A DNA stretch of 64,000 bases from Adineta vaga (lineage: Eukaryota; Animalia; Rotifera): assembly GCA_021613535.1 (NCBI GenBank), contig CP075494.1, positions 4,092,001 to 4,156,000 of the forward strand, in the 5' to 3' direction. Below, one piece after another: positions 24,401 through 57,400 of the stretch (positions within the stretch are counted from its first letter, which is position 1; every line of letters begins with the position of its first letter). The notes under the pieces are model-generated. The model saw nothing but the letters and a program-made list of their open reading frames with translations, did not search any database and was not told the DNA's origin. A program made the translations under genes and the position numbers.

Positions 24401-24952
24401 CATCCAGACTTAGGTAGTAGTTATAATAACATTGGTTTAGTGTATTCTGATAACGGAAACTATTCAAAAGCTCTTGAATACTACAACAAGGCACTTGACA
24501 TAGCAAATAAATCCCTTCCTTCTGATCATATACATTTAATTATCAGTTACAACAACATTGCTTCAATGTATTTAAAAATGGGAGAATATGCGAAAACTCT
24601 CGAATATTGTATCAAGACGCTGATGATTCAACAAAAATCTCTTCCTCCAACTCATCAAGACATAGCTATCAGTTATGAAACCATCGGTATTTTATACTTC
24701 AACATGGGAGAATATTCAAAAGCCCTTGAAAACTATCAGAAAGTACTCGCAATTAAAGAAGGATCTCTTCTCTTTACTCATTCAGACTTAGGTACCATCC
24801 ACCACAAGATGGAAGAATACTCGAAGGCTCTAGAAAATTACTCAAAGGCACTACTAATTCTAGGTCAATCTCTGCCTAAAACGCATCCAACATTAGCTAT
24901 TATTCACGATAAAATTCGATCGGTGTTTTACAAGATGAAAGACCAGTCATAA
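21413..24952 (+). CDS. DED-like domain + transmembrane segment + coiled coil + about 19 TPR (42-aa) repeats
   Basis: Exon 1 has a death-effector-like helix pattern (LRSIIINLRHRLTDHDRKRLHFYVG...LINALDEIYC). GT-AG joins through CTFVFVLLLLVVNTEVLFLSFW can be made in frame with the 858-aa ORF of HPDLATSYNNIGxVYxxMGDYSKALENxxKALEI repeats. Confidence 0.8.
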
Positions 24953-35086: not shown

Positions 35087-36205
35087 ATGTTTTTCTTCTC
35101 GATTTGTTTGTTTCTTCCAATCATTGATACCATCATAATAACGCGAATTCATCGATCTGCTATCTTTAATCCTAATTCTTCTTGCGCTCTTCTTCGCAAT
35201 GTGTCAATACCTATTGATGGATCGATTCAATCATGTATATGGGAATGTTTCTACGAGAATAATTGCCAGACAAGTGTCTACTTCTATGAAAAGAAAATAT
35301 GTTTATTATATACGGAATTATGTGAACTAACTAAAATTGAATCATTAGGAAATGTTCACGCAAGTGTCATTTGTCATAAAAAAAGTCATAGTAAGTGTAT
35401 TTATTTATTATATTACGAAAGAAATATTTTGCTAGACCCTATCATTACCTGTCCTGTCACTACGATATCCCACCAATTGACAACAGAAATAACAGTACTA
35501 CCATCAGTAGTATTGAGCACTACACAAAGTGAGTACTTTTGTATTTTAGATTTAGTAAAAGCTTAGTTTGGAAGTTTAATTCTGTGAGACTTTTCTTTTT
35601 CTAAAATAATAGATCCAACGTCTACAAGTTCTTCGATGATTCCCACAAATACGACAGGAATCAATGTCAGTTCACCATACATTGTTTCTCTTCCTTTTTT
35701 TGGGAATACATGGACTTGCATCAATGTTAGTTCGTCTATCTCGTCTGCTACAGGTGGAAGATTTTATATTAAACAAGGTCTAACTTACTCTATTAGTTAT
35801 ATGACAAGCGTTACGGCTTATCTCGAATCAGATGCAAATTCAACAATCAATTCTTGTCAATATGTTATGGCGTATGTTGAATCCAATGCCGTCTTATCAA
35901 CTCCAGCGATTCAAAATGTTACAGTTTATTTGGCGTCAAAAGCAAGTCTATCTCTTTCCTCATGTGGAAGTGCTAAAGTTTATATGGAATCCGAAGCAAA
36001 GTTATCAATTTCAAACTGTGGAAGTGTTCAAGTATACCTTAAGTCAAACGCGTCAATGGATTCTGCTAATAATTATGGGCAAGTTACTGCCTACTATGAA
36101 AGTGGCGCTCAACGAATATATCCAGCGTACAGCACACCTAATGAGACCTTATGCTCTTCGATTACATTCAATTATTCAAACAGTTCAACAAGAACATGTC
36201 AATGA
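35087..36205 (+). CDS. Secreted PAN/apple + Thr-rich linker + beta-solenoid repeat protein
   Basis: Three exons; CIWEC...C PAN motif; about six 18-aa repeats of consensus VxxY(L/M/V)xSxAxLxxxxCxx. Confidence 0.8.
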
Positions 36206-36699
36206 TTACATGAAAAACATTATTTTTCATCCTAATTGTCCACATAAAGTACTTAAAAAACATTTTAAATAAAAGGTTTTTTTTCTTCAACTATTCAAAA
36301 GAAAACTCTTTTACGGACATAGATATCAGTATATATGATCAGAAGATTACTACAACATAATCAAGTGAGAACTTCTTTCGAGACTCTCATTATTTTTACT
36401 TTGTTATGTATTATATATATTGATTAAAATAGATCTCTCTCACAATCAAGCCAGTCAACACATACCGTGTTAATTGAAAAAAGAACAAATAAATACTTCA
36501 TTCTTCTTAACAGAGACGATGCGTGAGGATAATTATGGAGTGACGCGATGGCTAAGTTTTACTCTCACGTGTAAAATAAAGTCGTTGATCAATTTCTGTA
36601 TACTCACTGTACATATATCATTGTAAATAATGAAACATGTAGATATACGTAATAACTTATCTATTTTTGCTGGTTAATGACCATGAGAAGTTACACCTC

Positions 36700-37480
36700 A
36701 AGAGAAAAAATGCTCATTTATATGAATCAAATTCTGATTTATATTGGAGTAATGTTATTCGGAATAATTCTAGGCAAATTTACAAGTTGAATGTTTCGAT
36801 TTTCACGTTCAGCACGAGCAAATTGCAATCTATGTACACTACTAATGAAGGAAACAATATGCAAAGATGATATTATCGAACTATAGCCATAATTTATGGA
36901 ATTATTTATGTAGCTGTTGAAGAGTGTTTCTCGGAATATTTAAGAATACATCGATCTGATATTAAACATATTCATTCTTTTCGTTGGATAATAATGAAGA
37001 ATTATTTATTTAGTTTACAAACTAAACGTGAAATATTTGTAATTCATTTTTACTCCTGAATTATATGCTTTTATGAAGGACAAACGTATGACAATCGGTA
37101 CATACTCAGCTAACTATGATTGAGTGAAAACATGTTCAATCAGTTGTTCATGTACAGTACTGAGTCCATGTTCTACAATTTTGTTTTATTTGTCTGTTAT
37201 GGAATCGGAAATATTACATAACACATGCAGCCTGTCGAAAGTCTCTTGGTAGCGATCAAGGAATCCATAATTATATTGTTTATAATCAAAAAGTATCAAA
37301 AGTAGCCATCCATCATATATCTCATGAATATAGATTTGCTACCACTTTGGGTTGTGCGTTATGGTAGAGAAGGGAATCATTTTGGATTGGTTTTAAATGC
37401 AAATCAATCCGTTTATGCAATGATTCACCAATAGAACAGAAGTCAGCAGATATGCGAGATTGATGGATACTTATCGTAGG
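36700..37480 (+). pseudogene. Decayed glycosyltransferase-like gene
   Basis: Fragments IHSFRWIIMKNYL, TIGTYSANYD*VKTC, DQGIHNYIVY and VLNANQSVYAMIHQ*NR resemble the DQGxHN...HQYDR motifs of a GT-A-like family. Confidence 0.55.
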
Positions 37481-37534
37481 TTCAGTACAAGTCTAATTTC
37501 AATGATTTGTTTTAAATAATTTATTAGTATTTTA

Positions 37535-40500
37535 TTAAAAAATTAAGTGACAAAAACAACTCAATTCTCGAATAAACATTTCAAGGATGGTTTCGATATC
37601 CTTTTCTTTCCAACTACCAAGAGGTAATTCAACAATTGTTGATTCATTCATTTTGATATAGACGGATATTTGAATTTGATCGTCGTTTCCTAATCGATTC
37701 ACTTTGAATTTTAATTGAAGTTGACGCTCACCAATATTCAACAGATCATAGTTTTGAATTATTCCTGAATGACCGGACCATTCATTATTTTCATTGTTTG
37801 ACCAATTAATTGAGCCAATACGAGAATAATAGACAATAAACTCTTCTTTCATTCGAGAAATCAATAATCCAAGACGAAGGAATGGTTCATTCAATACAAC
37901 CATAGAGCTATTTTGAACGATTATATCTTGTTCTTTCATTGTGTTTAAAATTTCAAGAAGCATTCGTATTTGATATTTCAATTCGCCGATCGACCATTGT
38001 TGTTGTAAGTTGCCAAAAGCTCGATCAAAGATGAGTTGAAGATGATTATTCAATGCATGAATCTTCCATAAACAACGTCCTAAAAATAAGATTCGTATGA
38101 GTTCTAAAACGTGTTACTAATCATTTTTCTCTTACCTGTCTCTGATACCAAAGTATCTTGAATCAACTGATTATTTTCCGGTACCTGATGTGGAGCCTTG
38201 CCTTCGAAATTCCGTGCGACTTTTGGTTCACGGTAAGTCATCATCGAGAAGAGTATAGCACAGATATAACTGGTGTCAATACCTGGACTTTGACGTTCCG
38301 ATTGGCTCAATTCTTTTTCTTCGTCGATGTCATTGTTGTTCAATGGTTTCACTTCAAATTGAACAGGAAGATAAAAATCATTTGTCACTGGATTATCGAC
38401 TGGAAAGAAACTGACATCGCTGGTTTTTTCAATTTCATTGGATGATGAAATATGAGCAAAGTCAAAATCTGTTATCTGTAAACAGAATCCTTCTTCTTCA
38501 TCATCGTATACACAAGGTTCAATATAGATTTTTGAAGGTGTGAGATTTCGATGAATGACACCGCATTGATGAATTTCGTTGATTAGATCGATCAATTCTA
38601 AGATAATTAACAATTTGTCCTCAAAGCTAGGCAATTCATCTGCCAGAAAACGATCCAGACTCGTTCCTTCAGGTTTTTCAGTCATTAACCATAGTTTTTT
38701 CCATGAATTCGAACTAATCGTTGATTTTCCATAAAAACAATCGATCAATTTCGATACACCATCAACTTCTAAAAGCAATTCAACTATTTTCATTCGAAAT
38801 ATGCCTCTTTCAATTTACCTGATAGTCGCTGAAGAGCCAATCGATGTCGTTCAACACGTAATCGCGACGATTTATCAGATATTTTGGAGTAAATTCGCAA
38901 GTATGCACTTTTATTTGTATCGGTGTGATCGACGATGGTATAAATCTGATCAGTTTCATTTAATAACATTGGATCTTCGAGAGACCATGGAGATGGTAAT
39001 GCGAGTTGTTCTGTTCGTTGATCTTGATCATGATTATTAACACTAAATATCGTTTTCAAAGCTTGTTTTCGCATCCCTTTGACTGCCGCTGCGTGACGCT
39101 CTTTTCGACTGTTGATACTTGAGATAGTAGACGGAGTCGGACTATTCACTTGTTGTGGTGTTAACGAATGATAGTTACCAATCGTCGAATTGTAATAGTC
39201 AACATTCAATTCTAGTTGACATTTCATTCGAGTGTGTTGATCTCTGGAAAATGTTTGATCGTGCCAAGCATGAATTAATTCTTTGACGAATGCTAAAGAA
39301 TCTTCGTCAGTTACATAGACAATTGGTGGTGCCGATGGATCATTTTCATTGCAGATTATAAGATTCTTTTGATCTCGATAGAATCTTAACCGTAAACGAT
39401 CGAAAATTTCAGGTCGCGTAACACCAGGTGGAAAATTACTAATTCGTACACGATAACCATCTTTATCTAGGTAGAAAGAAAGTCAAGTTGAATTCAAAGA
39501 TTTTCTGTAGCCATTACCAGAGATAGGGAGACGCTGTGAATGAGTTTTTCTTTGTTCATCATGTCCATACCAGCATTGAGTATTTCGACATCCCACTGGC
39601 TGTACGCATCGAATGTGTTTCTTTCGACAACAAATAGAAAATCGGCAGTTACCTTTTCGGTAAGATCTACACAGATCGAAATGATTCACCGGTGTTGGAA
39701 TTACTTGGCATTGTATTCGACAACCACGCAAACAATAGCCATTCTTTTCCTGGACTAATTTTTGAAGGGATTCATTGCTACCGATATCTCTAATCCAAAC
39801 TTCCACGGGTTTTCGCTCGTTTTCAACTAAATTATTTTGTAATTCATTATAAGGTCGAATAAGAATATTTGTGATATCGACACGGAAAATCTTTGAAAGT
39901 TCTTCGCCAGTAATATCGTTGGGTAAACTCGTTACATGAATACAATATTCTATCATATCAGAAGTTGGAACAGTTCCTAAATAAAAGATGACATAATGAA
40001 GTATGTCAATGTACGAGTACGACTTACGGCGATTGTTTGGTACCAATACTTTTTGTACTTTTAATGGTATTTCTTTTACTTTGTGTGTCACTTTTTCCAA
40101 GACGATCCGATCCACCGAGTCATAACTACAATAAATAACAGTGAACAACGATTTTTTCTCAATATTCTCTATCTTACTCATCAAAAATGAAATAGATCTT
40201 CTTTTCTGAATATTCTCGATAGTTGATTGAACCATATTGTCGAAAATATTTTTCGACACTATCAATTAATCCATCTGGAGAACATTCATTCGACAGTTCA
40301 ACTAGTAGACCACAAGTAATTTTATGAGATAAATAATGCTTTCTGGACAGCTGTCGAGAAACCGAAAGTTCCTTTCCAAAAAGTTGAATTGGTCGTTTTC
40401 GCATGATTTCATTGACATATTCTTCATGAGAAAAGATGATAACAGCACATTGAGACTTTCGATTATGAATAACTAGAAGACAAAAAAAATTTAAATTGAA

Positions 40501-40764
40501 TTCTTTTAGAGAGTAATTTTTCTATTTATAAGACAAACATGCTGATTCATTCCATGTCACTTTGAATTTGACGTTGTTACTGTCCAAATTTCTGGCAATG
40601 ACTTTTTTGATAGCACTCGCCTTGACAGTTTCATCGAGATCATGAACCATCAAACAGCGTTTATATTCTTCATTTTCTTTGTCAATAAAAGCTCCGGGTT
40701 TCTAAAACGAAGCAAAGAAATTTAGTATTTTTTTTTCGAAATTCATGAAACTTACCTTGTTCAT
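37535..40764 (-). CDS. RRM x4 / CCCH x2 / pseudokinase / conserved C-terminal domain protein
   Basis: About eight exons, spliced mostly in frame: hnRNP-A-like tandem RRMs (FIFDDYDSVDRIVLEK), RRM3 (IHVTSLPNDITGEELSKIF), CRSYRKGNCRFSICCRKKH and CVQPVGCRNTQCWYGH, RRM4 (VRISNFPPGVT), and a kinase fold with AYLR, HRNLTPSK and DFD. Confidence 0.82.
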
Positions 40765-41119
40765 TGTTTTGACTGTAGTAGTTTTCAATTACAAAGAAGT
40801 CGTTTACTGAAATTTAATGCGCTTTCTTTTTTGTTCCGCAGAACATTTATATGTCTCTGTTCTCTTTCTTCCAACTGCGTCACTGGGAAAAACTCTCACA
40901 TTAAATTCAATCTCAAGTAAATAACAATTCGTATTTTCATCCATCATCGATGCCCTGATAATTAAAACAATAGAATATTCCCTTGGCATCTTGAGGAATT
41001 GAGGGATAAAGAGAATTAACCCACACACCCACACTTTCTACATGTTTTTTGATTTAAATAGTTTTATTTTTAAATAATCAATTGTTGTACGAATAAAATT
41101 CTTTTTAAAATATTTAAAA

Positions 41120-43504
41120 TTAGTTCGAAAGATATGAATTCGTTTTGTAGCGAGTTACGTATCTAAAATAAAAGTAGAATGAAACATACAAGATCTCAAA
41201 ACAAACTAAAAAGATTTTACCTTGAATATTCGGTATGATCATGTTTTTTCCTGCTAATTGAATTAAAGTATTAAGTTCAATAATGAATCTGTTCTCAATC
41301 ATGCCAATTTGAACTTTTTCATTGAATCTAGCAACTGGAAGTAGAACAGTCACACCATCAATGACAGTCCCAATCGAAACTTTGATAACATCTGAAACGT
41401 CATCAATATAACAATGAAAAATAGTGAATAGAGACCATTGTGAACTAGAATGTGTACAACTCAATATATCCAAATGTTTCCTTTCGTGCAATATGTTGAC
41501 ATCATCTATCCATTGACAGCTATGAAATGACCAATTTAAATGATTGTCTACAGCATATTGTTTTATGAATATTTTCTTTGCTCGAGAAAATGCCTGTGCA
41601 ACTTGAGTGAAATCTGGTCGACGAATTAAAATTTGACTTAATTTCGATTGTGTTGCCAATTGTTCATCAATTGTATTATTTTGAATCATTTGATTATTTA
41701 AAATTGATTGCTGGTTCGATGTATCATCTATCAGCTGTAATAATATATTAAAACGATACTCTAACTGTTCAATTGTCCATTGTATGTCGGGAAAACCAAA
41801 TCCTCTATCAAATGTATCCATTAAATAGTGTTCTATTCGTGATTGAAAATCTTCAACTAAAAAAAACATCAATCTTTTATCCAAATCAATTATGTGTTAC
41901 CTTTGTTGACGAGAAATTTACTGATCAAATTTTGGAGGTTTCGGTAGCATCTTTCGTGTGGCTGTAGTCCTGATGCGGTACGAGCTGATCCTGGATGTTC
42001 TTTTGTCATTAATGTAAATAAAATAGCGCAAACGCTACTTGGATCGATCGTGGGACTTCGGCGTAATTGTTTGCGCTCATATTTTTCCAGAGTCGTCATT
42101 TGACGTAGAGCAAAATCAGATGCTTTGGCTAGTTGTGAAACACGACACCAAGAGTGACCAATATCTTCTTGAAGGTCTGTAACTGTTATGTCATTCATGT
42201 GTGAAGATCGAAATTTTTCCGATGATGGATCATTGATTTCTGTTCGCATATGTGCTAGGCCATAGTCAATGAGTGTGAATTTACACTGACTACAGATTCG
42301 ATTTAATTGGTGATTGTTACAATCGACCATAATATTAGCAGGTTTAATATCTCGATGAATAATTTCTTTTGAATGTAAAGATTTAATTGTTATCAACAGT
42401 TCTTGACAAAATCGAATTGAATCAATTGGTTGAATATCTATAGTATTTTTCTTCCAGTCATCGATCAATTGCATCAATGTAAGACCTGGACTATAGCTCA
42501 TGATAGTCCATAAAGGTTCTTTTGATTCTGATATTTCCTTTATAGAATCTGGAATATTTGATTCAATGAACTGAGAAACATTGCTCATACCTTGCAATGA
42601 AGAAGTAATTAAGCTATTTATTTATGTATAAAAGATGCATGAAGATGTATACCTTTAATGATTTTCAGAGCATTTCTTTCTTGCAAAGCTCTTGTTTGAA
42701 GCTTTCGTAGTTCCTTTGGATCCTTTTCTGTAAAAATATAAATTTTAATAACAGCTTCTCCCTCTTTGGGTGACTGAATTTTAATGATAGATCCTTGGTG
42801 AGTTTTGCCGCAGATGTTCGCATCAATAATAGTCCATTTTGGTGGAATAATTGATCGCAGTCTTTCTAAACCTAGTTTTTTTGGGGTATTTGTTTTTTCT
42901 AAATAAAAGTTTGTAAGTAAAATTTCAATTAGAAAACAATTGCACCATTCTTTTTGTTCCGCTTTTCTCGTTCTTTAGCGTCCGATCTCTTCGAGTGTTT
43001 ATCCTTCTTTGTTTTGGAAGTATTTTGACGATTCGATCTTTTCTGTTGATCATTAGGAACACTATCATTGTCAGAGGCATTCAATCGACAGGTAGAATTA
43101 TCTCTTTTTATTGTTTCATCTTCTTCTTCATCCGAATCTATTTCTAAAGAGATATTCTGTTGTTTTGGTTGGGAAGTAGCGGCCCTATTGTCAATAACTG
43201 ATAAGGTATCCGTTTCATCTCTATTCATCAAAATTTATTATATGTTTTAATTTTTGACCTTTAATCTTACTCTAACGAACTAGTTGAGTCGTGCACTTCC
43301 GAATTAGCCTGTGCATTGAATTTTTCAGCTGCGTTTTTAACATGTGAAGAACCATTCAATACTTCAGCAGACTCTAAATGAACCATACATAATGTTAGGA
43401 TTGGCGAAAGATTCATTTACTGATGTACTTATTCGAGAATCATGATCGCTTGAATTACGAGAACTTGATTTTTTCTGTTTCCTCGGATAGTTTGATTCAG
43501 CCAT
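41120..43504 (-). CDS. Ser/Thr kinase with disordered N-terminus and the same C-terminal domain as the neighbouring pseudokinase
   Basis: MAESNYPRKQ start, acidic and basic low-complexity exons, then AVIK, HRDIKPAN, DYG, RRSPTID and FDRGFG. The C-terminal domain aligns by eye with 37535-38053. Confidence 0.82.
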
Positions 43505-43603
43505 TCCTTCGTTAATACTGATATAATCTAAAAGACTGCTTGATTTAGTATTCAAGATAAAAATATGAATAGTAAAAAATATTCTTTATAAAGGATTAAA
43601 ACA

Positions 43604-46038
43604 TTACATTACTTTTAATTCATAAAAACTTATTACTCCTGTTAAACGACGAGTACCAAAACTATTAGATTCACTACTATCCAACGATTCTTTTGCCTCT
43701 ACTGTTGAAATGATCAAATAATTTTCTCCAAAAAAACGTGTGTATATATCACTTTCACTAGTAACATTCGAATCAATTTGTATGGCTTTATAGTTTTGAT
43801 CCAAAACGAAGAATTGATCTTTTTCACCGATTGTTAACCATTCTTTATCAGATAATTGTAAATTATGATAAAGAGTTAGCTCGGGTATTTGTATTCTCTT
43901 CAATAAAGTAAGATTATCATCAATGAGACGGAAATCAATAACCCAATTACGTTTATTTAAACGAACATTAAACGCAATGTATTCATTTGTTGTACTACAT
44001 GTTGTTCGACGAATTTCATCAGTATTTCCATAATTTAATATTTCTTTCGTCCATTCACGGTAGAGAAACATTGTTCTGATTGAATATTGTTCAATTTTGT
44101 TGTATGAATGATTGATAAATAGTTTATTATCATTTGTACATGAAATAAATCTTAATTTATCATTTCCTTGTGGTTTAATATGTGGTATTAAATTGATTCT
44201 ACCACAATTTCCCCTTTGATCGGGAGTTAAAACAAACAAACGATGTTGACAAAGAATTAGAAATTGTTGTAAAATCTGACACCATACTATTCTTTGAACA
44301 AAACCTGCTGCTCTATTTCCATGAATATATGTTGATGTACCGACTTGTTCAGCATTCAAATTAAATAGTTTCAATTTTCCATCTTCTGCAAGAAGTAAAT
44401 ATCGATCAGAAGTATCAAATACACCATATTGATTTTCGTCTGTCGTTAAATGTATTTGTTTGATTATAGGACTAGTGAGAACTTTTTCAATATGTACTGC
44501 AACATCACCTAAAATTGAAAAAAAAAGTATTTTACTGCACAAAATATCGACTGCCACACTTTTCTTTAGTTTTGATGGTTTTTTAGATTGAATTTCTTTT
44601 AATTTTCTTAGATCATTTGCTTCAATATCAATAGTTATATTTGCGATTAGATCATGTGCAGTTGGTCGTTCATCGGGTTTATGTGATATTAATCGTCGAA
44701 TGACTGATTTCTACCGGAATAAAAAACAAGGAAAATAAATGATAAGTGATTGCTTTCTATATTGTATCTTACCAAACGTTCATTGGCATATTTAATACAA
44801 AAATCTTCTGGAAATAGCGGTTGTGATTTTCGTACATCTGCAAGAATCTAAGAAAATCATACAAAAAAAAACTAAACTTCCAAAAGCACGATACACTCTA
44901 AGTGTTACTATTTCTCTAGCCTTGTTGTGTGGCAAGGGGTACAATAATTCAAATAAAATAATACCCATTGAATAAATGTCGAATTTATTGGTCAGAAGTT
45001 CTTCAGCTGGTGGCATGTATTCAGGTGTTCCTCGACGTTTTATTACATTGCCGTTAGATATCTCAACAGTTTCTATCATATCTTTTGTCATTAACGTAAG
45101 TCCAAAATCAGCGATTTTAACACAATCATCTTCAAACGAAAATAAGATATTTTCTGGTTTTAAATCACGATGAATCTAAACAGAATATTATAGAAATTTC
45201 ACGGGATTCTTCAAGACTTACTAAACGTTTTTCATCATGTAAATATTTGACGCCCTCGACAATTTGATAAAATATATGAAGTGCAGTAATACGATTCAAT
45301 CCGTTATTTGAACCATTGGTTGATCGTAGATGGTGTCTTAACGACTGTGATTTACATCGACTTGTAACAATAAACAGATAGATACTGGATTTTGAGAGTG
45401 ATGATGATGATGATGATGCTCCTGATTTTTCACTATTTTCTATAACTGAGTCAGTACTATTGTGACTATCTGTTGAAATTCGATCAGAATTATATGATGA
45501 TGTCGTTACTTTTACATCGTTGCTTTCACTTTGTGATGTTGACGAAGAAAATTGTGTTGAATGACTATAATCACTCGAATATCTATTTGATGATGATGAT
45601 GATGTATCTTCTGTAAATAATGATACTACACGACCATTATCGTTAACATTTAGAATTTGATCTCGTGTTCGATGGTAATCGCTTGATTCTTTCCATCGAT
45701 TATGATATCGTAAAACATGACGATGATCTAATTGAGAAAGAATCTTTAGTTCCTTCAAAACATTATCTTGATCGATTCCTCTACAAGTAAAAGAATTGGT
45801 GTAGAAAATAAATTTCTTTTAACATATATGAAATATACGCTTTGAGTTTAACACATTTGATTGCTACTGGGCAATCGGAATCTTTTTCTATTGCTCCAAA
45901 TACGATACCGTATCCACCTTTTCCAAGAAATTCATGATCTTTGTAATCCTCACAGAAACTATTACACAAGTAAATGAAAACTAAGCATTTTTAACTGGTT
46001 TATAGTTACGATGATCGAAATGTTTCATCTGTATTCAT
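43604..46038 (-). CDS. eIF2-alpha-kinase-like (PKR/PERK/GCN2/HRI family) kinase fused to a C-terminal beta-propeller-like domain
   Basis: FCEDY...LGKGGYGIV, AIK, ELKILSQLDHRHVLRYHNRWKE, a long Ser-rich insert before YLFIV..C, HRDLKPEN, DFGL, GTPEYM and DIYSMGIILFELLYP. A phase-1 splice joins the kinase to the 43604-44557 beta-rich ORF. Confidence 0.85.
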
Positions 46039-46949
46039 TTTGTTTGTAATGACTTCGTTATAACAATGCGATGTTTACTGCTAAAATATAAAAATCTTTT
46101 AGCAGTATTACATATACATGATAAAATGGTTTATGCGTCTACTATACCGGCTGTCTTCTGTGAAATTGGATGCTTTCACTTTTTTTTACTGATAAAGTGT
46201 ATTTTCTCGAACAAGCTTCAAGGTGACGCACCTCACAACGCTATTTACTTATTATTCGAGCAGAATAGCGTTTTTTTTCTGTCCTCTCTTTGGTCTGATG
46301 TGGGAATAATACGAATGTTTTCTTTCTTTCTGATGGCAACGAAGGTTGTGCTTTCTGCGGCGTTTCTTAATCGTAAAAATTCTTTTTTTTACATGAAAAA
46401 TGAATAAAACAATTGAGTTTAACATTTAATAATTACACAATTTTTTACTCGCCCGATGTTTAATTATCAAATCAAGCAAAATTAACACTGAATAGAACGA
46501 AAACACAATAAAAGTTTTTCTCTCTTAATAACTCTTTCTAAAAGAATTGAGATTTTCTCTTGATGATGTTTTGGCAGGATGAGGTTTCCCTCGTCAGATT
46601 TTACTAATGATACAAAAATAAAAAAATACACATATATTTTCATTCTCAACAAAATACAATGCGAATATTATGTATCATATGATACAGCTGTGATTAACGA
46701 TATCTTTTTGCCGAGGATGTGAAAAAGGGTAAATTAGATAAACAAAATGCCTAAGACACGCATTCGAACCAGGTTCATGATCATTTGTGTGAGGAATTTT
46801 TTGATAAAGAAATGAAGTTCTATATTTAGAAGAAAAAGAAATAAAAAATACGTCTTAAATTCAGCAGAAAATGAATAGCAGTCAAGATTAAATTTCTGTT
46901 CAGTCAGTATATGGTTTCATTAATAATCGAGATGATTTCTATACATTAT

Positions 46950-47730
46950 TATTAGATGAGAGAACTAAGGGTGATATAGTACACCATTACTTAATAAACT
47001 TGCTTTTCCTAACCAACAATAATCTGTTCCGTTTGGTCCATGAATTTGAATGCCAGTAAATAGAGCATACTGACGATTATGAAAATGTTCTACATCTTGT
47101 TTTGCATGGTGTTCTAAGTCAATATGGTGATTGTTTCATAAGCTGCCATTGCTACTTGAAATAAATCGGATACATTTTTGCATCGGTAAAAAGACCAGTT
47201 CTTCTCACCATATGTTTTTTAACATACTCATTTCCATATCATTTTCATCAAAATGAAGATTCAATTTATCTGAAGCAATTTCAACGGTAAACACAGCAAG
47301 AGCTCCACATACTGTTGTTTTCGCACTCATACCACTACGAGTTCTATAGATTGATCCAATACATCTTTCAGGATCTATCGCAATATGTGTAAAACAATAA
47401 TAAATAAATCGAGCATCATCTGGTGCATGATGATGTGCAGCTGAAAAAGCCGTATTACCACAAAATAGCATACTAGAGAAACAGAAAGTTAAATCATGTC
47501 TTTATCTATTCTTTCCACAGCTATCGCTTGATTATCTGTATCAGATTTGTATTTTTCATCATTATCTAAATTCAATAAAATGTTAGGTGTGTCAATCAAA
47601 TAAAAATGTTAATGTACTTGAACCATTCTTGACATTTTCCCGTCTTATCGTTACTTGTGAACGCCATCGATCTCCATAACAATCAAACTGTTGAACAATA
47701 GCCATTGCATATTTATTATTTTGATGTATG
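46950..47730 (-). pseudogene. LCIB/LCIC-like (limiting-CO2-inducible, beta-carbonic-anhydrase fold) gene, frameshifted
   Basis: MLFCGNTAFSAAHHHAP, THIAID, VCGAL, DMEMSMLK and YALFTGIQIHGPNGTDYCW; frame breaks; the N-terminal CRDE motif was not found. Confidence 0.72.
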
Positions 47731-48145
47731 CAATACTGAAAACAATATGACATTTATATTTCATTTTGATGCCCTTTTATTTGCGTAGGTTCACATTAAC
47801 ATCGCAACTGTTTTCTACTCGATTGTTCAATGAAATGTTTTTGTTGAATTTCTGATTATTTTTCTTTCGAAGGTAGAAAACAAACTGAATGTCAGTTTCA
47901 AGAGTATAAATATGACTATAAATTTATATAAAGACAACATAGAACTAGTATAGCAGTACTTGATAGACTAACAACCAAGTCATTATAATTCCTGAACTGC
48001 TGAATATCTTTTCTTTGAAAATACTCATCGATTGTTTAGTTTAAAAATGAAATGAAACCATTTGAGTATATATCTATGTCTTAATGCAACTTCAATTCAA
48101 CGAAATAATGAATTGTTAACATCTATCGAATCGCTTGGTTGAGTT

Positions 48146-51911: not shown

Positions 51912-52925
51912 ATGTTGGACGTTGCGTCTATTAATCGGATAACAAATGATCTAACACTTTACGGCAGTTTCATAATACTCATTCTTGGCAACACAGGATG
52001 TCTATGCAATTTCATAACATTTTCATCTAAACAACTGAGACAAAACTCGTGTGGTTGGTATTTTCTGATGTCGACTATAGCAGATTTTCTTTTTCTCAAT
52101 TGTCTTTTACCCACAAAACTGGCTAGTGATTATTTTGGCAACTCCTCAATCACTACATCACCCATCTACTGCAAAATGCGTACATATATTGGATTTGTGC
52201 TACCATCCATTTCTCTTGGTTATTTAGTACTCGCTGCGTTCGACCGATGCTTGACGACATCACAAAGCACACGTCTTCGCTCATTTAGTCAAATCAAAGT
52301 GGCATATCGTATGACATGTACACCAATCCTTCTATATGCACTTACCACGGCACATCAGCTCTACTATTATGATTTACGACCGAAATGTGCACCGCTATCT
52401 GGAATTTATTCTATTTTCATGTCGGCCTACAATATTGTCTGGACAAGTTTAGTTCCGCAAACTGTCATGCTCGTGTTTGGTCTCATCACTTTCTTCAATA
52501 TGCGAGCGAGCCGTCAACGTTTGATAAGCCGAGATGTACACCAGTTAAGTCAACGGCGAAGTCGAGCCGATGTTCATTTAATCACTATCGTGCTAATACA
52601 AGTGCTAACCAGTTCCATTTTGCTCAATATTCGAACAGCATACGCCTCATACTCAATACTCTCAACGAGTCTCGTCAAAGACAATCAACGACTTGCTCTT
52701 GAGTCATTGCTCTTACAAGTGTCAAGCTTAATTTTCTATACAAATTCCGCCAAGAGCTTTTTCTTCAATACACTCACGAGCAAGCTCTTTCGTCAGACTT
52801 TACGTGACCGTCTTCTGGCCTGTTTTATTCTTATAGCACCATGGAATACTCGTATTCATCCCATCATAAAAAGAAAAGTCGAATCGAATCAATTGAACAA
52901 TGTACGAACGATATTCGCTCAATAA
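51912..52925 (+). CDS. Orphan rhodopsin-like GPCR, single exon
   Basis: 337 aa with GNTGCLCN, CKMR, AFDRC and FFFNTLTSKLFR; upstream TATAAAA near 51849. Confidence 0.9.
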   Translation: MLDVASINRITNDLTLYGSFIILILGNTGCLCNFITFSSKQLRQNSCGWYFLMSTIADFLFLNCLLPTKLASDYFGNSSITTSPIYCKMRTYIGFVLPSISLGYLVLAAFDRCLTTSQSTRLRSFSQIKVAYRMTCTPILLYALTTAHQLYYYDLRPKCAPLSGIYSIFMSAYNIVWTSLVPQTVMLVFGLITFFNMRASRQRLISRDVHQLSQRRSRADVHLITIVLIQVLTSSILLNIRTAYASYSILSTSLVKDNQRLALESLLLQVSSLIFYTNSAKSFFFNTLTSKLFRQTLRDRLLACFILIAPWNTRIHPIIKRKVESNQLNNVRTIFAQ

Positions 52926-53129: not shown

Positions 53130-53971
53130 TTATTTGCATTTTGTTTTCCTTTTGTCTTCATTTGAATTCAACGGCTTTTCAGTTAAATAAATTGGTTCTA
53201 AATCGATCAAACCATCAAAACGTGTTGGCTTTTGTCGTTGTTTACTTTCGATGCAAACACCATTATTGACACTTCGAAATAATTGTCGTAAATCTCTATT
53301 TGGCTTTTTTAAATGTTTTAATAAATGTTTCGCATATAATCCATTTCTTTCAGTTAATAAGCCATCCGAAGCAATTTGATATTGACTACAAGCGAACACA
53401 ACATATGTACCTTTGGGAACCTTCGTTTCATCTGAATTATTACTTTCATATTTGACTAAACAAATATTATGTAAGAGAGATTATCTAAGTATTTGTTTTC
53501 CTTACCATTCCTTCCTCTTCTTCTTCGTGTGTAGGAATACGATAATCGACAACAATCTAATATAAATATGATAATAGACGATGGAAACTGTTGCGACCAT
53601 TGGTGAAGAATCTGTTCACTATGAATTACACAATTCTCAATTCCTTGATCATTTTCAATGAATTCATCATCAATTGGTAATAAATAATTCTTTCCATTCA
53701 TTTCACAACCATGGCCAGAGAAATAGAACAAAATCAAATCACCATCAAGTATTGTTTTCGAAAAATCCGAAAAAGCATTAATCATTTCTGAATTACATAA
53801 GTCATGGTGCTTGTCTACTTGAAATTGCATAGTTCGTAAAACAAAACCAATATCATTGACGTCATTGATTGTATGATAAAGTTGATCTTCATCCTGACAA
53901 TAGTTTTGATTTCCAATAAGTAATGCAACTTTACGTTTAAAAGTTGAAAGGTTGGAACTTGTAGTATCCAT
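53130..53971 (-). CDS. Caspase-like peptidase C14 (meta/paracaspase-like, catalytic domain only)
   Basis: Exons 53971-53506 and 53455-53130: KVALLIGNQNY, FYFSGHG, NYLLP, IFILDCCR, NGLYAKHLL and QKP; His-Cys dyad intact. Confidence 0.9.
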
Positions 53972-54431: not shown

Positions 54432-57400
54432 TTAATCCATATCGAATTCATTCATAGTTGATATTGGAGAGTAAAAAGAATTGGCAGTTCGTCTATCATT
54501 TTGTGCTTTCTTCTTAATGTGATATTTCTTCCACCATATAGTACCAAGTACAAGAAGAACAACGGCAGATATAATGCTCAATATGAAAAACACTGGTCTA
54601 TGATTTCTGCTGACTGATTTGTTTCCCTTTTCCATATCATTTGTTGATCCATCGATAGAAATACTAAAAACAAAAAAAAAGCATTCCACCAAGACTGAAA
54701 AAATAAATTAACAATTCCTATTAATAATCTCTTTGTTCAGTATGACAATCAATTTTGATCAAAATTCTAAATTACTATATATTATTCAAATTAAAAGAGG
54801 ATTATAGGAAACTTCTCACTTAGTTATATCATTATATTTTTAGATAGGCTTCAATAAAGTTTAGATGTGATTCATGTCGACCTGTATATTTTCTTTTAAA
54901 TATAATTATCTTATTGGTCTATAACCACTGGCAGGACTGATTAAATTGCACATAAAAGAAATTTACTCTAATGCTCAAAATTTTATCTATACAAGGATGA
55001 TAGTTTTTAAGAAGATCAACTAACCGTTTCGCTTGAATGATTGCCGATTTTTCAATTGGTAATTTTTGGCATATAACAGCTGCTAGTTGCTCACAACCTA
55101 TATCAGCACATGAAAACGATGAATATTCTTCCGATCGAAAATTAAAAGATCCACAACCAATGTTTATAGAATTCGATGTCTTTTTTTTTGCGAGCTCAGA
55201 TTTCGAGTGTGGTGTTAACTTTTGAAAACGGGAACGAAAAGTACTTTCACATTTGTCAGCTCGTAAGGGGAACGAATATGAGTAACTTTGTGTGTTTTTA
55301 TTTTTCGTGTTATATCGCACAACAGTATGTTTTTGATTATCATAAATAACATTAACATGCGCAATACCAGACCACACGTAAATACGACGATATGATAATA
55401 ACACTTCTTTGATCATTGTTATCGTCGCTGATGTTTCAGGTATAAAAAGTGTCGCATTATCACGTGTACATTCAGCTTTTGCTTCGTTCCAAGTTGTTTC
55501 ATGAAAATTTACCTTATAACAATAGTCATTTATTAAGTAATATGCTTCATCATCTCCACAAGTGTAATCGATTGTTGTTTTGACTGATATATCCAATGAA
55601 GAACCATGCTCAATCGGACGAATAACAGTTGAATTAGGTTCCCAATGTTTGTGAACACAAACCGGCATAGCAGATTCAGATGGACATTCATTTGATTCAG
55701 TTAAACATCGTTCATAATCTATCTTATTATCAACCTGAATCCTTTCAAAACTAAGCACAATACAATGTGGATCGAAAGAATCTGATGTTTTAGAGCATCG
55801 TTGAATGGCACGGTTTGATGTTTGACTAGTATTCATAAAATTGGATGCACGATCAACCCAGAAATGTTTTTTTCTATCAGGCATATCGAACGAATTAGTT
55901 ACACTACGGGTTATATCGATGGCCGAACTTGATAAGATATCTTGAATTTCTAAAATGTCATTGACTTTTGCAAGAGTACTATCAATCGATTTACAATGAG
56001 ATTGTGCATCAGGAAAAGCGTGTGCCTTCTGTAGGGTATCATCAAACATACATCGTTTTTTATCATCATTCACGATAAAACCTCAAAGAATAGTAAAATG
56101 TATTTTCTTTCTTTAGCGAGCAAGTTTGCCCTTTTTTTCGTTTTCTTACCAGTCGGACAGCTCAGTTTCAGAGCATACGTTGAATAAATTGATGCATTAT
56201 TTTCAGCTCCGCATGTATGAAAATAATTACCTGGACACTCTCGATTACAAGACAGATCTTGTGACTTGAATACATTCGATGGTTTTCTTCGTGGCGGTAA
56301 ATTATTTGTACATAAGCATTTGTTGCTATTAAGAAGAGCATAACTTTGATTATATCTATTACATATTTCCAAACAATGACGTGGATGTGTATCGTATGCA
56401 TGTTTGATATTGAATTGGTACATGGTTGATGGATTTATTGAATGTAAGTAGATGCAACTATCATAACTGAAAGGAGGATTTGATTCAGTTATTCTACTGT
56501 AATCATATGATGACAATAAACTAATAGTGAGATTGTAAACAATGATTGTATTTTCATCCCCACATTGTTCATGTTTGTTTCCTAATGGTGTGAATAATGA
56601 AATTCAAAAGATATCGATGCAGATACTTCTGACATAAGAGTAGTCAAACTTCGGTTTCACGACACTTCGGTGAACAAGAAATATGCGCAACTCACTAAGG
56701 CCCGCTAGATCCAAAAATTCTATACCTATTCCTGCACCCTCTAGTTTTTAAGATTTGTAGATCCGGATCCGGACTGACACTCACTGTATTAGAGATTTTT
56801 GCATTCACCTTCGGTCACCAATACTCATTTCAATAAATATTAAAAAATAAAGAAAATACTGAATTTAAACGTTCTCAGAACACTTGAACCGCTTGAAAAA
56901 ACCCTTTTTCTATTGCATTCGGTTTGAGATATTCGATTAAATCTAAAGTGATTATAGTGAAGAATTTCTGAAAAATCATAGTCCCAATCTTTCATTATAG
57001 GAAGAGCAATTAATGTTCTGTAAAATAAGACTGACCAATTTATTATATTTCAATATTTATTTCATGAGTAGCTGCTCATTTCCAGTTGCTCTAGCAAGTA
57101 CAGAATTAATTTAACTTTAAAATATGATTTTCGTGAAGTGAATCAGTGGAGAATATCCATCAAATAAAATTTTAGGGATCTATAAGATACCACTATAATG
57201 AACAAGAGTAACATACCTGGACAAGGACGCCCACATTGTAGTTTTTTATACTTGGAATGTAATGATGAAGTTTTATTTAGCCATATAGCACCATAATTCA
57301 AACAATAACATCTATTCATTTGAAGAACAGCTAATCTCGTTTCTAACTTTCGACAGATAGATAAACATAATTTATGTGTTAAATGATTGGATATGACCGA

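What the first reader, a model, noticed from the sequence alone, without database searches (positions are those of the whole stretch)
37535..46038. Three-gene kinase cassette: eIF2a-kinase-like gene + active kinase + RNA-binding pseudokinase paralogue (candidate antiviral/stress module)
Seen: three tightly packed, co-oriented genes with apparently intact frames. Gene 1 has eIF2-alpha-kinase hallmarks. Genes 2 and 3 share a kinase fold plus an unnamed C-terminal domain of about 150 aa; gene 2 keeps the catalytic motifs, while gene 3 has lost them and carries RRMs and CCCH fingers. Established: PKR-type eIF2a kinases, CCCH/RRM proteins (ZAP, PARP12/14) and kinase-pseudokinase pairs (RIPK3-MLKL, plant tandem kinases) are recurring immune designs. 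Inference: a sensor pseudokinase binds RNA and activates its paired kinase, with translation shut-off by the neighbouring gene. I do not recognise a described system with this organisation.
Basis: partly seen in the sequence, partly recalled or inferred. Interest (0 to 1): 0.85.

Follow-up and report, generated by a model that had tools for sequence, protein, structure and literature searches.

The report
Rotifer eIF2α-kinase beside kinase/pseudokinase paralogues
Three intact neighbouring genes of a bdelloid rotifer encode an unusual translation-control kinase, a stripped-down kinase and an RNA-binding dead kinase from a rotifer-only family; nothing yet shows that they work together as a defence module.

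Summary
Three co-oriented minus-strand genes fill 37535-46038. Each has an ATG, GT-AG introns of 46-66 nt and one terminal stop. The DNA is bdelloid rotifer; the best hits are Rotaria sordida proteins at 69-72% identity.

- **Gene 1 (718 aa):** an eIF2α-kinase-family member, closest to PERK, GCN2, PKR and HRI. It has a serine-rich insert and a roughly 300-aa C-terminal domain seen only in bdelloid or unnamed environmental sequences.
- **Genes 2 (613 aa) and 3 (966 aa):** old paralogues (26% identity) in an apparently undescribed family. All 23 named clusters are bdelloid. The layout is [RRMs]-[CCCH fingers]-kinase or pseudokinase-new C-terminal domain (CTD).
- **Gene 2:** keeps the catalytic residues and has no RNA-binding part.
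- **Gene 3:** has lost the β3 lysine, the catalytic aspartate and the catalytic asparagine. Its roughly 50%-identical relatives show the same losses. It carries RRMs and two CCCH fingers.

The [quoted passage not shown] reading stays an inference:
- Genes 1 and 2 also share a contig of under 10 kb in R. sordida.
- Gene 2-gene 3 linkage elsewhere could not be tested.
- The upstream regions share no motif.
- Other family members are dispersed.

The parts
43604..46038 (-). Gene 1: eIF2α-kinase-family gene, 6 exons (46038-46010, 45958-45839, 45780-45222, 45175-44909, 44847-44773, 44710-43604), 718 codons
   Evidence: The model is frame-consistent and the ATG and first intron were read. Pkinase matched three exon pieces. 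The best PDB matches are PERK, PKR and GCN2. The R. sordida relative P0097 matches PERK at 2.7e-24.
44620..46038 (-). Gene 1 kinase domain (bounds approximate). It starts about 10 residues after the ATG. Motifs read: GKGGYG, VAIK, HRDLKPEN, DFG
   Evidence: Translations; PDB alignments.
45369..45677 (-). Serine-rich insert inside the N-lobe of the gene 1 kinase (bounds approximate)
   Evidence: This stretch lies between the two PDB-matched parts of the exon piece: residues 22-47 and residues 118 onward. Sequence.
43607..44557 (-). Gene 1 C-terminal domain, about 300 aa, fold unknown. Relatives are bdelloid or unnamed environmental sequences
   Evidence: Relatives are P0001-P0004 and P0105-P0108. 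Pfam gave no match. The only PDB signal is one 25-aa WD40-like motif.
43229..43603 (-). Spacer between the gene 1 stop and the gene 2 ATG (375 nt)
   Evidence: It shares no motif with the other upstream regions.
41155..43228 (-). Gene 2: kinase plus CTD, no RNA-binding part. Exons 43228-42946, 42898-42653, 42590-41922, 41856-41221, 41162-41155 (613 codons). The alternative end is 41120 (644 codons)
   Evidence: Model check. Pkinase E 2.3e-14. Motifs. The nearest relatives are the R. sordida fragments P0024/P0103, 69% identical over the kinase exon.
42946..43228 (-). Gene 2 N-terminal low-complexity exon (acidic, then basic)
   Evidence: Translation. No Pfam family below E 4. No CCCH pattern.
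41922..42898 (-). Gene 2 kinase domain (two exons). It keeps AVIKIY, the αC Glu, HRDIKPAN and DYG. The glycine loop is degenerate
   Evidence: Family alignment. PDB matches cover only the catalytic core and point to no kinase group.
41221..41856 (-). Gene 2 CTD (the family's unnamed C-terminal domain), encoded by one exon
   Evidence: Alignments A1 and A3. The profile found 56 representatives. No Pfam or PDB sequence match.
40765..41154 (-). Spacer between the gene 2 stop and the gene 3 ATG (390 nt)
   Evidence: Sequence read; model.
37535..40764 (-). Gene 3: RRMs - 2 CCCH fingers - pseudokinase - CTD. Exons 40764-40756, 40701-40539, 40472-40178, 40125-39518, 39466-38819, 38768-38136, 38079-37535 (966 codons)
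   Evidence: Model check. Relatives P0007/P0061 (Rotaria sp. Silwood1) align across exons 4-7 at 49-55% identity.
39672..40701 (-). Gene 3 RRM-type region, about three RRM-like units, two of them split by introns
   Evidence: The window exons alone give weak Pfam hits (RRM_PARP14_3 E 0.044, RRM_1 E 0.041). They are homologous to the N-termini of P0030, P0033, P0037 and P0026, which carry Pfam RRMs. The clade profile matches hnRNP A1 at 6.4e-11.
39561..39671 (-). Gene 3: two tandem CCCH zinc-finger patterns (C-x7-C-x5-C-x3-H and C-x5-C-x4-C-x3-H)
   Evidence: The pattern scan found 32 matches in 32 family proteins, against a mean of 0.1 in 200 shuffles. The best PDB match of this exon is Yth1, a CCCH protein, at a weak E 0.029.
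38136..39005 (-). Gene 3 pseudokinase domain (two exons; upper bound approximate). It reads AYLRIY, HRNLTPSK and DFD, with no glycine loop
   Evidence: Alignment. Pkinase E 6.6e-6. The same substitutions occur in the P0007/P0061 group and in P0009/P0100.
37538..38079 (-). Gene 3 CTD, encoded by one exon
   Evidence: It is 61% identical to P0006 and 49-50% identical to the P0061 group.

Best explanation
The region holds three separate, intact genes of a bdelloid rotifer.

**Gene 1.** It is a lineage-specific cytosolic member of the eIF2α-kinase family.
- Shown: a PERK/GCN2/PKR-type kinase domain with intact catalytic motifs, a serine-rich insert, and a roughly 300-aa C-terminal domain known only from bdelloid or unnamed environmental sequences.
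- Inferred: that C-terminal domain is the sensor or regulatory part. On activation the kinase phosphorylates eIF2α and lowers translation initiation.

**Genes 2 and 3.** They are old paralogues in a family whose named members are all bdelloid. The full layout is RRMs - one or two CCCH fingers - kinase - new C-terminal domain (CTD).
- Shown: gene 3 is a full-length member whose kinase has lost three catalytic residues. Relatives only about 50% identical have the same losses, so it is a maintained pseudokinase and not a decaying copy.
- Shown: gene 2 is a short member with the catalytic residues but no RNA-binding module.
- Inferred: gene 3 binds RNA and acts as a scaffold or allosteric partner through its pseudokinase and CTD. 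Gene 2 is a catalytic member that could pair with it through those shared domains.

**The trio.** That the three act as one module is possible but unsupported. Ancient tandem duplication (genes 2 and 3) plus retained local gene order (genes 1 and 2) explains the neighbourhood equally well.
For: **Gene models.** All three are frame-consistent.

**Gene 1.**
- 11 of 11 PDB matches of the N-lobe exon are eIF2α kinases, and the top three matches of the catalytic exon are PERK.
- The R. sordida relative P0097 matches PERK at 2.7e-24, GCN2 at 6e-20 and HRI at 5e-12. The first clearly different kinase comes at 1.7e-9.
- The C-terminal domain recurs with the kinase in R. socialis (P0107, 725 aa) and A. 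steineri (P0108).

**The family.**
- The CTD profile found 56 of 1.84 billion representatives.
- 23 of the 27 family clusters looked up carry an organism name, and all 23 are bdelloid. The other 4 are unnamed.
- In a further search, 33 hits had E up to 1e-25, followed by a gap to generic kinases.

**Motif states.** Of 21 long members aligned, 10 have HRD plus DFG, 9 have an H-x-N type loop, and 2 have HRD without DFG.

**Age of the paralogues.**
- The CTD tree puts gene 3 in a 97-98% bootstrap clade of degenerate long forms from both Adineta and Rotaria. Gene 2 sits in a separate 90% clade.
- The two introns shared by genes 2 and 3 lie at aligned positions and are both phase 1.

**RNA-binding modules.**

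**Linkage.** Gene 1 and gene 2 relatives lie on one contig in 2 of 2 R. sordida assemblies.
Against: - No expression, interaction or activity evidence exists for any of the three genes.
- The gene 2 glycine loop keeps only one glycine. It has DYG for DFG, and the family has a Q where APE has its E, so "active" is a prediction.
- The window's own RRM exons give only weak Pfam hits. The closest relatives P0061, P0064 and P0100 give no Pfam RRM hit at E up to 0.01.
- The WD40 signal for gene 1 is a single 25-aa motif scored 13 times against one repetitive protein.
- The R. sordida accession numbers differ by 4 and by 7, so other gene models may lie between the two relatives. Their order and orientation were not seen.
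Confidence: 0.6

Rival explanations
1. The three genes form one RNA-triggered defence or stress module. The gene 3 pseudokinase senses foreign or aberrant RNA through its RRMs and CCCH fingers. It activates the gene 2 kinase by heterodimerising through the kinase or CTD. The gene 1 kinase then shuts off translation by phosphorylating eIF2α.
For: - The three genes are co-oriented with spacers of 375 and 390 nt.
- Gene 2 lacks an RNA-binding part and gene 3 lacks catalysis, so the two are complementary.
- 16 of 17 CCCH-carrying relatives have degenerate or DFG-less kinases.
- PARP14-type RRM hits occur in relatives.
- The family is lineage-restricted, diversified and fast-diverging, as immune gene families often are.
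- Gene 1 and gene 2 relatives share a contig in R. sordida.
Against: - Genes 2 and 3 are ancient paralogues from different clades.
- Some relatives combine RRMs, and in one case a CCCH finger, with intact motifs in a single protein (P0019). The division of labour is therefore not the family's rule.
- Fused gene models show FG-GAP, TPR or MGAT2 genes upstream of long-form members, including one close relative of gene 3 (P0067).
- Four A. vaga members are dispersed.
- The upstream regions share no motif.
- There is no co-expression or interaction evidence.
- Local gene order between related bdelloid genomes can persist without any functional link (recalled).
Confidence: 0.2
2. Genes 2 and 3 serve ordinary RNA metabolism rather than defence. 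Gene 3 would be an RNA-binding pseudokinase scaffold in the manner of PAN3 (CCCH finger, pseudokinase, C-terminal knob), recruiting partners to mRNAs. Gene 2 and gene 1 would have unrelated roles. The adjacency would be historical: an old tandem duplication and retained gene order.
For: - Gene 3 has the same order of parts as PAN3: CCCH finger, then pseudokinase, then a C-terminal domain. The PAN3 layout was read in a passage of PMC10590902.
- The best PDB match of the finger exon is the mRNA 3'-end factor Yth1.
- The clade profile matches hnRNP A1 RRMs.
- The family is old within bdelloids: Didymodactylos, Adineta and Rotaria all have members.
- Nothing points to shared regulation.
Against: - No Pan3 pseudokinase family hit at E up to 0.01 on P0061, or at E up to 10 on the window exons.
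- The CTD profile hit no PAN3 chain at E up to 10.
- A housekeeping role fits poorly with a family confined to one animal class and split into many divergent paralogues.
Confidence: 0.2
3. Gene 3 is a dead duplicate on its way to loss, and its missing catalytic residues are simple decay.
For: Three catalytic residues are substituted and the glycine loop is gone.
Against: - All seven exons are open, with intact splice signals and a single terminal stop.
- The same substitutions (HRN, K for N, DFD, R for K) occur in relatives only 49-55% identical.
- The pseudokinase exon is as conserved as the other exons: 54% against 49-55%.
- Similar degenerate clades exist in both Adineta and Rotaria.
Confidence: 0.03

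Closest known systems
eIF2α kinases (PERK/EIF2AK3, GCN2, PKR, HRI)
   Same: - The gene 1 kinase domain is most similar to these, and for one exon only to these.
- It has intact catalytic motifs and an insert in the N-lobe.
- The αF-αG stretch of the R. sordida relative aligns closely with PERK.
   Different: - None of the four known sensor layouts was found: no dsRNA-binding motif, no luminal domain or membrane segment, no HisRS-like or RWD part.
- The kinase starts about 10 residues from the N-terminus.
- The extra domain is C-terminal and has no Pfam match.
- eIF2α phosphorylation was not tested.
PAN3 (CCCH finger - pseudokinase - coiled coil - C-terminal knob)
   Same: Gene 3 has the same order of parts: an RNA-binding CCCH finger, a pseudokinase, and a C-terminal domain of under 200 aa. 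PAN3 is an RNA-bound scaffold that works as a dimer (passage of PMC10590902).
   Different: - No Pan3 family hit.
- No PAN3 chain matched the CTD profile.
- Gene 3 has several RRMs, which PAN3 lacks.
- The family also contains members with intact catalytic motifs.
IRE1 and RNase L (kinase or pseudokinase followed by a C-terminal KEN nuclease domain)
   Same: A kinase-fold domain is followed directly by a compact C-terminal domain. RNase L is an antiviral pseudokinase (title cited in PMC10057411). IRE1 chains appear among weak kinase-core matches of relative P0011 at E about 3e-4.
   Different: - No Ribonuc_2-5A/KEN family hit, and no IRE1 or RNase L chain for the CTD profile at E up to 10.
- There are no ankyrin repeats and no luminal domain.
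- The folds could not be compared.
PARP12, PARP13 (ZAP) and PARP14
   Same: They use the same kinds of RNA-binding module: CCCH fingers in PARP13, and an N-terminal RRM in PARP14 (passages of PMC10057411). The Pfam family RRM_PARP14_3 matches relatives P0033, P0036 and P0146.
   Different: The output domain here is a kinase or pseudokinase plus the CTD. No PARP catalytic, macro or WWE domain was found.
Kinase-pseudokinase immune pairs (RIPK3-MLKL; plant tandem kinase proteins).
   Same: A predicted active kinase and a related pseudokinase lie side by side.
   Different: - These are two separate genes with their own start and stop, not one polypeptide.
- No MLKL-like executioner domain was found.
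- Pairing was not tested.

Membership tests
eIF2α-kinase (PEK) family, gene 1 | Kinase domain closest to known eIF2α kinases | tested here: met
   - 11 of 11 PDB matches of the N-lobe exon are eIF2α kinases.
- The top 3 of 863 matches of the catalytic-loop exon are PERK.
- For relative P0097, 12 of the first 14 PDB rows are named PERK, GCN2 or HRI and 2 carry generic names. The next kinase class comes at 1.7e-9, against 2.7e-24 for PERK.
eIF2α-kinase (PEK) family, gene 1 | Insert within the N-lobe of the kinase (feature recalled) | tested here: met
   A serine-rich stretch of roughly 80-100 aa lies between the PDB-matched parts of the exon piece.
eIF2α-kinase (PEK) family, gene 1 | Intact catalytic motifs | tested here: met
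   GKGGYG, VAIK, HRDLKPEN and DFG were read in the translations.
eIF2α-kinase (PEK) family, gene 1 | Substrate-docking αG region of eIF2α-kinase type | tested here: inconclusive
   The R. sordida relative aligns with PERK through this stretch with many identities. The window's own exons 4-6 resemble that relative. No structure or residue-level test was possible.
eIF2α-kinase (PEK) family, gene 1 | Phosphorylates eIF2α | not testable with these tools
   No activity evidence is available.
PERK, PKR, GCN2 or HRI orthology, gene 1 | One of the known sensor domains: luminal domain with membrane segment, dsRNA-binding motifs, HisRS-like/RWD, or heme-binding N-terminus | tested here: not met
   Only kinase families matched the gene 1 exons and relatives P0107 and P0108. 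The kinase begins about 10 residues after the ATG.
Pseudokinase, gene 3 | Loss of the β3 lysine, the catalytic-loop aspartate and asparagine (motif names recalled) | tested here: met
   K is replaced by R (AYLRIY). HRD is replaced by HRN. N is replaced by K (HRNLTPSK). No glycine loop remains. The DFG aspartate is kept (DFD).
Pseudokinase, gene 3 | The loss is conserved, so the state is maintained | tested here: met
   HRNLTPNK/IDFD in the P0007/P0061 group and HRNLTPKN/IDFD in P0009/P0100. These are 42-55% identical to the window gene.
RRM-containing protein, gene 3 | RRM fold recognised by profile | tested here: inconclusive
   - Window exons alone: E 0.044 and 0.041, below the cut-offs.
- The nearest relatives P0061, P0064 and P0100 give no RRM hit.
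- In favour: homology to relatives that carry significant RRMs.
- In favour: the clade profile matches hnRNP A1 at 6.4e-11.
CCCH zinc-finger protein, gene 3 | C-x(5-9)-C-x(4-6)-C-x3-H spacing (recalled), conserved in relatives | tested here: met
   - Two patterns in exon 4.
- 17 of 32 family proteins carry at least one.
- 32 matches in total against a mean of 0.1 in shuffles.
- Weak Yth1 match, E 0.029.
- No Pfam zf-CCCH hit was listed for the exon.
PAN3 | Pan3-type pseudokinase and C-terminal knob | tested here: not met
   No such Pfam family for the window exons (E up to 10) or for P0061. No PAN3 chain matched the CTD profile.
IRE1 / RNase L | KEN (Ribonuc_2-5A) domain after the kinase | tested here: not met
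   No hit by Pfam on 29 CTD sequences at E up to 1. No hit by the CTD profile against PDB at E up to 10. A fold-level test was not possible.
PARP12/13/14 | PARP catalytic domain | tested here: not met
   No PARP, macro or WWE family appeared in any scan of the exons or of the 26 relatives scanned.
Conserved three-gene cassette | Gene 1 and gene 2 linked in another genome | tested here: met
   In R. sordida, P0001 (CAF4073115.1) and P0024 (CAF4073108.1) both lie on a contig of 9554 bp. P0097 (CAF1453123.1) and P0103 (CAF1453127.1) both lie on a contig of 9779 bp. Order, orientation and immediate adjacency were not seen.
Conserved three-gene cassette | Gene 2 and gene 3 linked in another genome | not testable with these tools
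One weak hint against: the fused model P0067 places FG-GAP repeats upstream of a close relative of gene 3.
Kinase-pseudokinase signalling pair | Physical or regulatory interaction of the two proteins | not testable with these tools

The most novel reading that the evidence does not exclude
Bdelloid rotifers have their own RNA-sensing kinase system. Multi-RRM/CCCH pseudokinases would act as RNA sensors and pair, through a new C-terminal domain, with catalytic paralogues. In this locus the pair would also be genetically coupled to a new type of eIF2α kinase. That would make it an invertebrate counterpart of the PKR, RNase L and ZAP logic, built from different parts.
Probability: 0.15. Interest if true: 0.85.

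Novelty: new variant of a known kind. Interest (0 to 1): 0.5.

Why it matters
**If the coupling is real.** As I recall, PKR-type RNA-activated kinases are known mainly from vertebrates, and little is known about how most invertebrates link RNA sensing to translation control. A rotifer-only family that joins PARP14-like RRMs and ZAP-like CCCH fingers to a kinase or pseudokinase would offer a new, testable design for RNA-triggered signalling. It sits next to an eIF2α kinase with an unknown sensor domain. It occurs in animals noted for surviving desiccation and for carrying much foreign DNA.

**Even without coupling.** Two things look undescribed in the literature I could search:
- an eIF2α-kinase subfamily with a new C-terminal domain;
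- a C-terminal domain of about 190 aa found only behind these kinases.

Tried and rejected
**Tested and not supported**
- **KEN domain or PAN3 knob as the CTD.** No sequence support.
- **β-propeller as the gene 1 C-terminal domain.** The apparent E of 2.9e-8 to a WD40 protein comes from one 25-aa motif. It was counted 13 times against a highly repetitive chain, and each match was individually insignificant. I keep this only as a hint.
- **Recent tandem duplication of genes 2 and 3.** Rejected: they are 26% identical and fall in different well-supported clades.
- **Gene 1 related to genes 2 and 3.** No cross-hit at E up to 1e-3.
- **Shared promoter words.** None above shuffles. This is a weak test on about 400-nt AT-rich spacers.
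- **Other features in 36000-48000.** No Rfam family and no tandem repeat.

**Synteny routes tried**
- The metagenome scan returned a single 1377-bp locus, L001, which is uninformative.
- Accession proximity worked only for R. sordida.
- It gave no adjacency for the A. steineri gene 1-like P0108 against the family members listed.

**Literature**
- Nine searches found no description of this family or locus.
- I saw search listings and abstract starts only, apart from passages of PMC12220480, PMC10590902 and PMC10057411.
- Supplementary tables were closed and I did not ask for them. The A. vaga differential-expression tables of PMC12220480 could bear on the expression of family members.

**Species.** The window's species was not identified. 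The nearest proteins are R. sordida at 69-72% identity.

Full report
**What is there**

The window is AT-rich, about 31% G+C, and carries short spliceosomal introns. In 37535-46038 every long stop-free segment lies on the minus strand. I derived splice models from candidate GT-AG introns, from direct reading of the two small first exons, and from alignment with relatives.

One search checked the models exon by exon. All three start with ATG, keep frame across GT-AG introns of 46-66 nt, and end in a single stop.
- Gene 1: 46038-43604, 718 codons.
- Gene 2: 43228-41155, 613 codons, or 644 if a last 58-nt intron is not used.
- Gene 3: 40764-37535, 966 codons.
- Spacers: 375 nt and 390 nt.

The organism is a bdelloid rotifer, not human. 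The best hit of the gene 1 last exon is an unnamed Rotaria sordida protein at 69% identity, or 72% in alignment A2. The species itself was not identified.

**Gene 1**

Evidence that it belongs to the eIF2α-kinase family:
- Pfam Pkinase matches three of its exon pieces.
- All 11 PDB sequences matching the N-lobe exon at E up to 0.01 are eIF2α kinases: PERK 3, PKR 5, GCN2 3.
- The catalytic-loop exon matches PERK best, at 1.9e-12 to 4.5e-11, with KIN28 next at 3.7e-9.
- The R. sordida relative P0097 covers the C-lobe and the C-terminal domain as one annotated protein. It matches PERK at 2.7e-24, GCN2 at 6e-20 and HRI at 5e-12.
- Of the first 14 rows for P0097, 12 are named eIF2α kinases and 2 carry generic names. 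The first clearly different kinase comes at 1.7e-9.
- The printed alignment shows close agreement with PERK through the αF-αG stretch.

Other features:
- The window gene has GKGGYG, VAIK, HRDLKPEN and DFG.
- A serine-rich insert lies between the two PDB-matched parts of the N-lobe exon.
- The kinase starts about 10 residues after the ATG, so there is no N-terminal sensor domain.
- Instead, about 300 residues follow the kinase. They match no Pfam family.
- This domain recurs with the kinase in R. socialis (P0107, 725 aa, 31% identical over the whole query) and in A. steineri (P0108). It also appears in ORF-like fragments from JGI, ENA and NCBI records.
- Its only PDB signal is a single WD40-like 25-aa motif. 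The score was inflated by 13 near-identical repeats in one chain. I treat the fold as unknown.

**Genes 2 and 3 belong to one family**

Similarity between the two:
- The kinase exons are 26% identical (E 1e-12).
- The last exons are 26% identical (E 4e-8).
- No other paralogue lies in the 64 kb.

Distribution of the C-terminal domain (CTD):
- A profile of the two last exons (A1) was scored against 1.84 billion representatives. It found 56 proteins at E up to 1e-3, 23 at up to 1e-10, and 4 at up to 1e-30.
- I looked up 27 family clusters. 23 carry organism names and all 23 are bdelloid: Rotaria sp. Silwood1 and Silwood2, R. magnacalcarata, R. sordida, Adineta steineri, A. vaga, A. ricciae and Didymodactylos carnosus. 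4 are unnamed ENA or Logan sequences.
- A profile search with A5 gave 33 family hits at E up to 1e-25. The 15 that name an organism are all bdelloid. After a gap, the next hits are generic kinases from 1e-16.
- The CTD occurs once per protein and at the C-terminal end in the rows printed. The exceptions are two gene models with extensions, P0030 and P0036.
- Neither 29 CTD sequences scanned against Pfam at E up to 1, nor their profile against PDB sequences at E up to 10, gave a meaningful match.

The kinase part matches known kinases only over the catalytic core and has no clear group affinity.

**Active and dead kinases**

In an alignment of 21 long members plus the window exons as separate rows (motif scans):
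- 10 members have HRD[IL]K.xN and [VI]DFG, together with a lysine in A[AV]IK[VI]Y;
- 9 have H-x-N type loops without DFG;
- 2 have HRD but no DFG.

Gene 2 keeps the lysine (AVIKIY), the αC glutamate, HRDIKPAN and the metal-binding aspartate (DYG). Its glycine loop keeps only one glycine. The whole family has Q where APE has its E.

Gene 3 reads AYLRIY, HRNLTPSK and DFD, with no glycine loop. The same changes occur in the Rotaria sp. Silwood1 relatives, which are 49-55% identical across all exons. The pseudokinase exon is no less conserved than the others. Gene 3 is therefore a maintained pseudokinase.

**RNA-binding parts**

CCCH fingers:
- Gene 3 exon 4 carries two CCCH patterns.
- The same scan found 32 matches in 32 family proteins, 17 of which carry at least one. 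The mean was 0.1 in 200 shuffles.
- Of the 17 carriers, 12 have H-x-N type loops, 4 have HRD without DFG, and 1 (P0019) has intact motifs.
- The best PDB match of the exon is Yth1, a CCCH protein, at a weak E of 0.029.

RRMs:
- The window exons alone give only sub-threshold hits: RRM_PARP14_3 at E 0.044 and RRM_1 at E 0.041.
- The nearest relatives P0061, P0064 and P0100 give none.
- Exons 2-4 are homologous to the N-termini of P0030, P0033, P0037 and P0026, which carry significant RRM hits.
- A profile of the gene 3 clade (A6) matches the tandem RRMs of hnRNP A1 at 6.4e-11.
- Single RRMs also occur on members with intact motifs: P0090, P0128, P0130, P0133/P0245 and P0246.

Gene 2 has only a low-complexity N-terminal exon.

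**History**
- A neighbour-joining tree of the CTD (32 sequences, 195 columns, 100 bootstraps) places gene 3 in a 97-98% clade of degenerate long forms from both Adineta and Rotaria.
- Gene 2 groups with P0005 and P0008 (90%) on the other side of the midpoint root.
- A second degenerate clade (P0020, P0033, P0037, P0146) sits among the intact ones. Catalysis was therefore lost at least twice.
- Both introns in the shared kinase-CTD part of genes 2 and 3 lie at aligned positions and are phase 1.
- The two genes are therefore old paralogues of common origin, not a recent duplication.

**Linkage**

Evidence for linkage of genes 1 and 2:
- In R. sordida, the gene 1 relative and the gene 2 relative lie on one contig in both assemblies.
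- In one, P0001 (CAF4073115.1) and P0024 (CAF4073108.1) are on a contig of 9554 bp. In the other, P0097 (CAF1453123.1) and P0103 (CAF1453127.1) are on a contig of 9779 bp.
- I could not see their order, their orientation, or whether other gene models lie between them.

Linkage of genes 2 and 3 elsewhere could not be tested.

Hints against a general pairing rule:
- Fused gene models put FG-GAP repeats (P0067, a close relative of gene 3), TPR repeats (P0092) or MGAT2 (P0084) upstream of long-form members.
- Four A. vaga members sit on three chromosomes with distant locus tags.

One A. steineri model (P0246) holds two kinase stretches, which may reflect a tandem pair. The three upstream regions share no word above shuffles.

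**Mechanism**

Shown:
- domain content;
- the state of the catalytic residues;
- conservation across relatives;
- lineage restriction;
- partial linkage.

Inferred:
- Gene 1 phosphorylates eIF2α when its C-terminal domain receives a signal.
- Gene 3 binds RNA and acts as a scaffold or allosteric partner.
- Gene 2 is catalytically competent and could pair with gene 3 through the kinase or CTD.
- The three cooperate.

The last inference is the weakest. I rate the integrated module at about 0.2.

**Comparison and novelty**
- Gene 1 passes the sequence tests for the eIF2α-kinase family but has none of the known sensor layouts.
- Gene 3 resembles PAN3 in its order of parts (passage in PMC10590902). 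It resembles PARP13 and PARP14 in its RNA-binding modules (passages in PMC10057411). It fails the membership tests for PAN3, IRE1/RNase L and the PARPs.
- Nine literature searches found no description of the family or the locus.
- The relatives are deposited only as unnamed or hypothetical proteins.
- I class it as a new variant of known kinds: an eIF2α kinase with a new domain, and an RNA-binding kinase/pseudokinase family with a new C-terminal domain.

**Limits**
- Names of kinase motifs, the CCCH spacing, the typical eIF2α-kinase insert and general statements about bdelloid genomes are recalled, not taken from a call.

Noticed in passing
window 46968-47498 (-): Directly upstream of gene 1, two stop-free segments match the LCIB/C-type beta-carbonic-anhydrase family (PF18599; E 2e-16 and 0.007). 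As I recall, this family is typical of algae and bacteria, so the gene is a candidate horizontally acquired gene.
   Followed up: no
window 22376-24952 (+): A single 858-aa ORF made almost wholly of TPR repeats (TPR_12 E 8e-176; NPHP3-type TPR E 3e-99). In Rotaria sp. Silwood1 the gene model P0092 fuses TPR repeats to an RRM-pseudokinase-CTD family member.
   Followed up: partly
window 53456-53971 (-): An ORF with a caspase domain (Peptidase_C14, E 8e-23).
   Followed up: no
window 54919-56516 (-) and 57838-59531 (-): Two neighbouring genes that each combine a WSC domain with a C-type-lectin-like domain. Hits: WSC E 2.5e-9 and 1e-3; Lectin_C E 2.6e-8; a weak lectin-like UL45 family hit at E 5e-4. 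This looks like a tandem pair.
   Followed up: no
window 10974-11888 (-) and 51912-52925 (+): Two intronless rhodopsin-type receptor ORFs (7tm_1, E 1.9e-12 and 4.6e-7).
   Followed up: no
window 72-725 (-): FG-GAP-like repeats at the window start. They resemble the N-terminal extension of the fused Silwood1 gene model P0067: 36% identity over 88 aa, plus two further repeats.
   Followed up: partly
relatives P0020, P0033, P0037, P0146 against the gene 3 clade: Loss of the catalytic aspartate seems to have happened at least twice in the family, in two separate clades of the CTD tree.
   Followed up: partly
R. sordida P0024/P0103 against window 41852-42030: The R. sordida gene 2 relatives lack the otherwise family-wide segment around the conserved αF-like motif. 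In addition, one model in each of the two assemblies is marked partial: P0024 in one and P0097 in the other. These may be gene-model errors or real differences.
   Followed up: no
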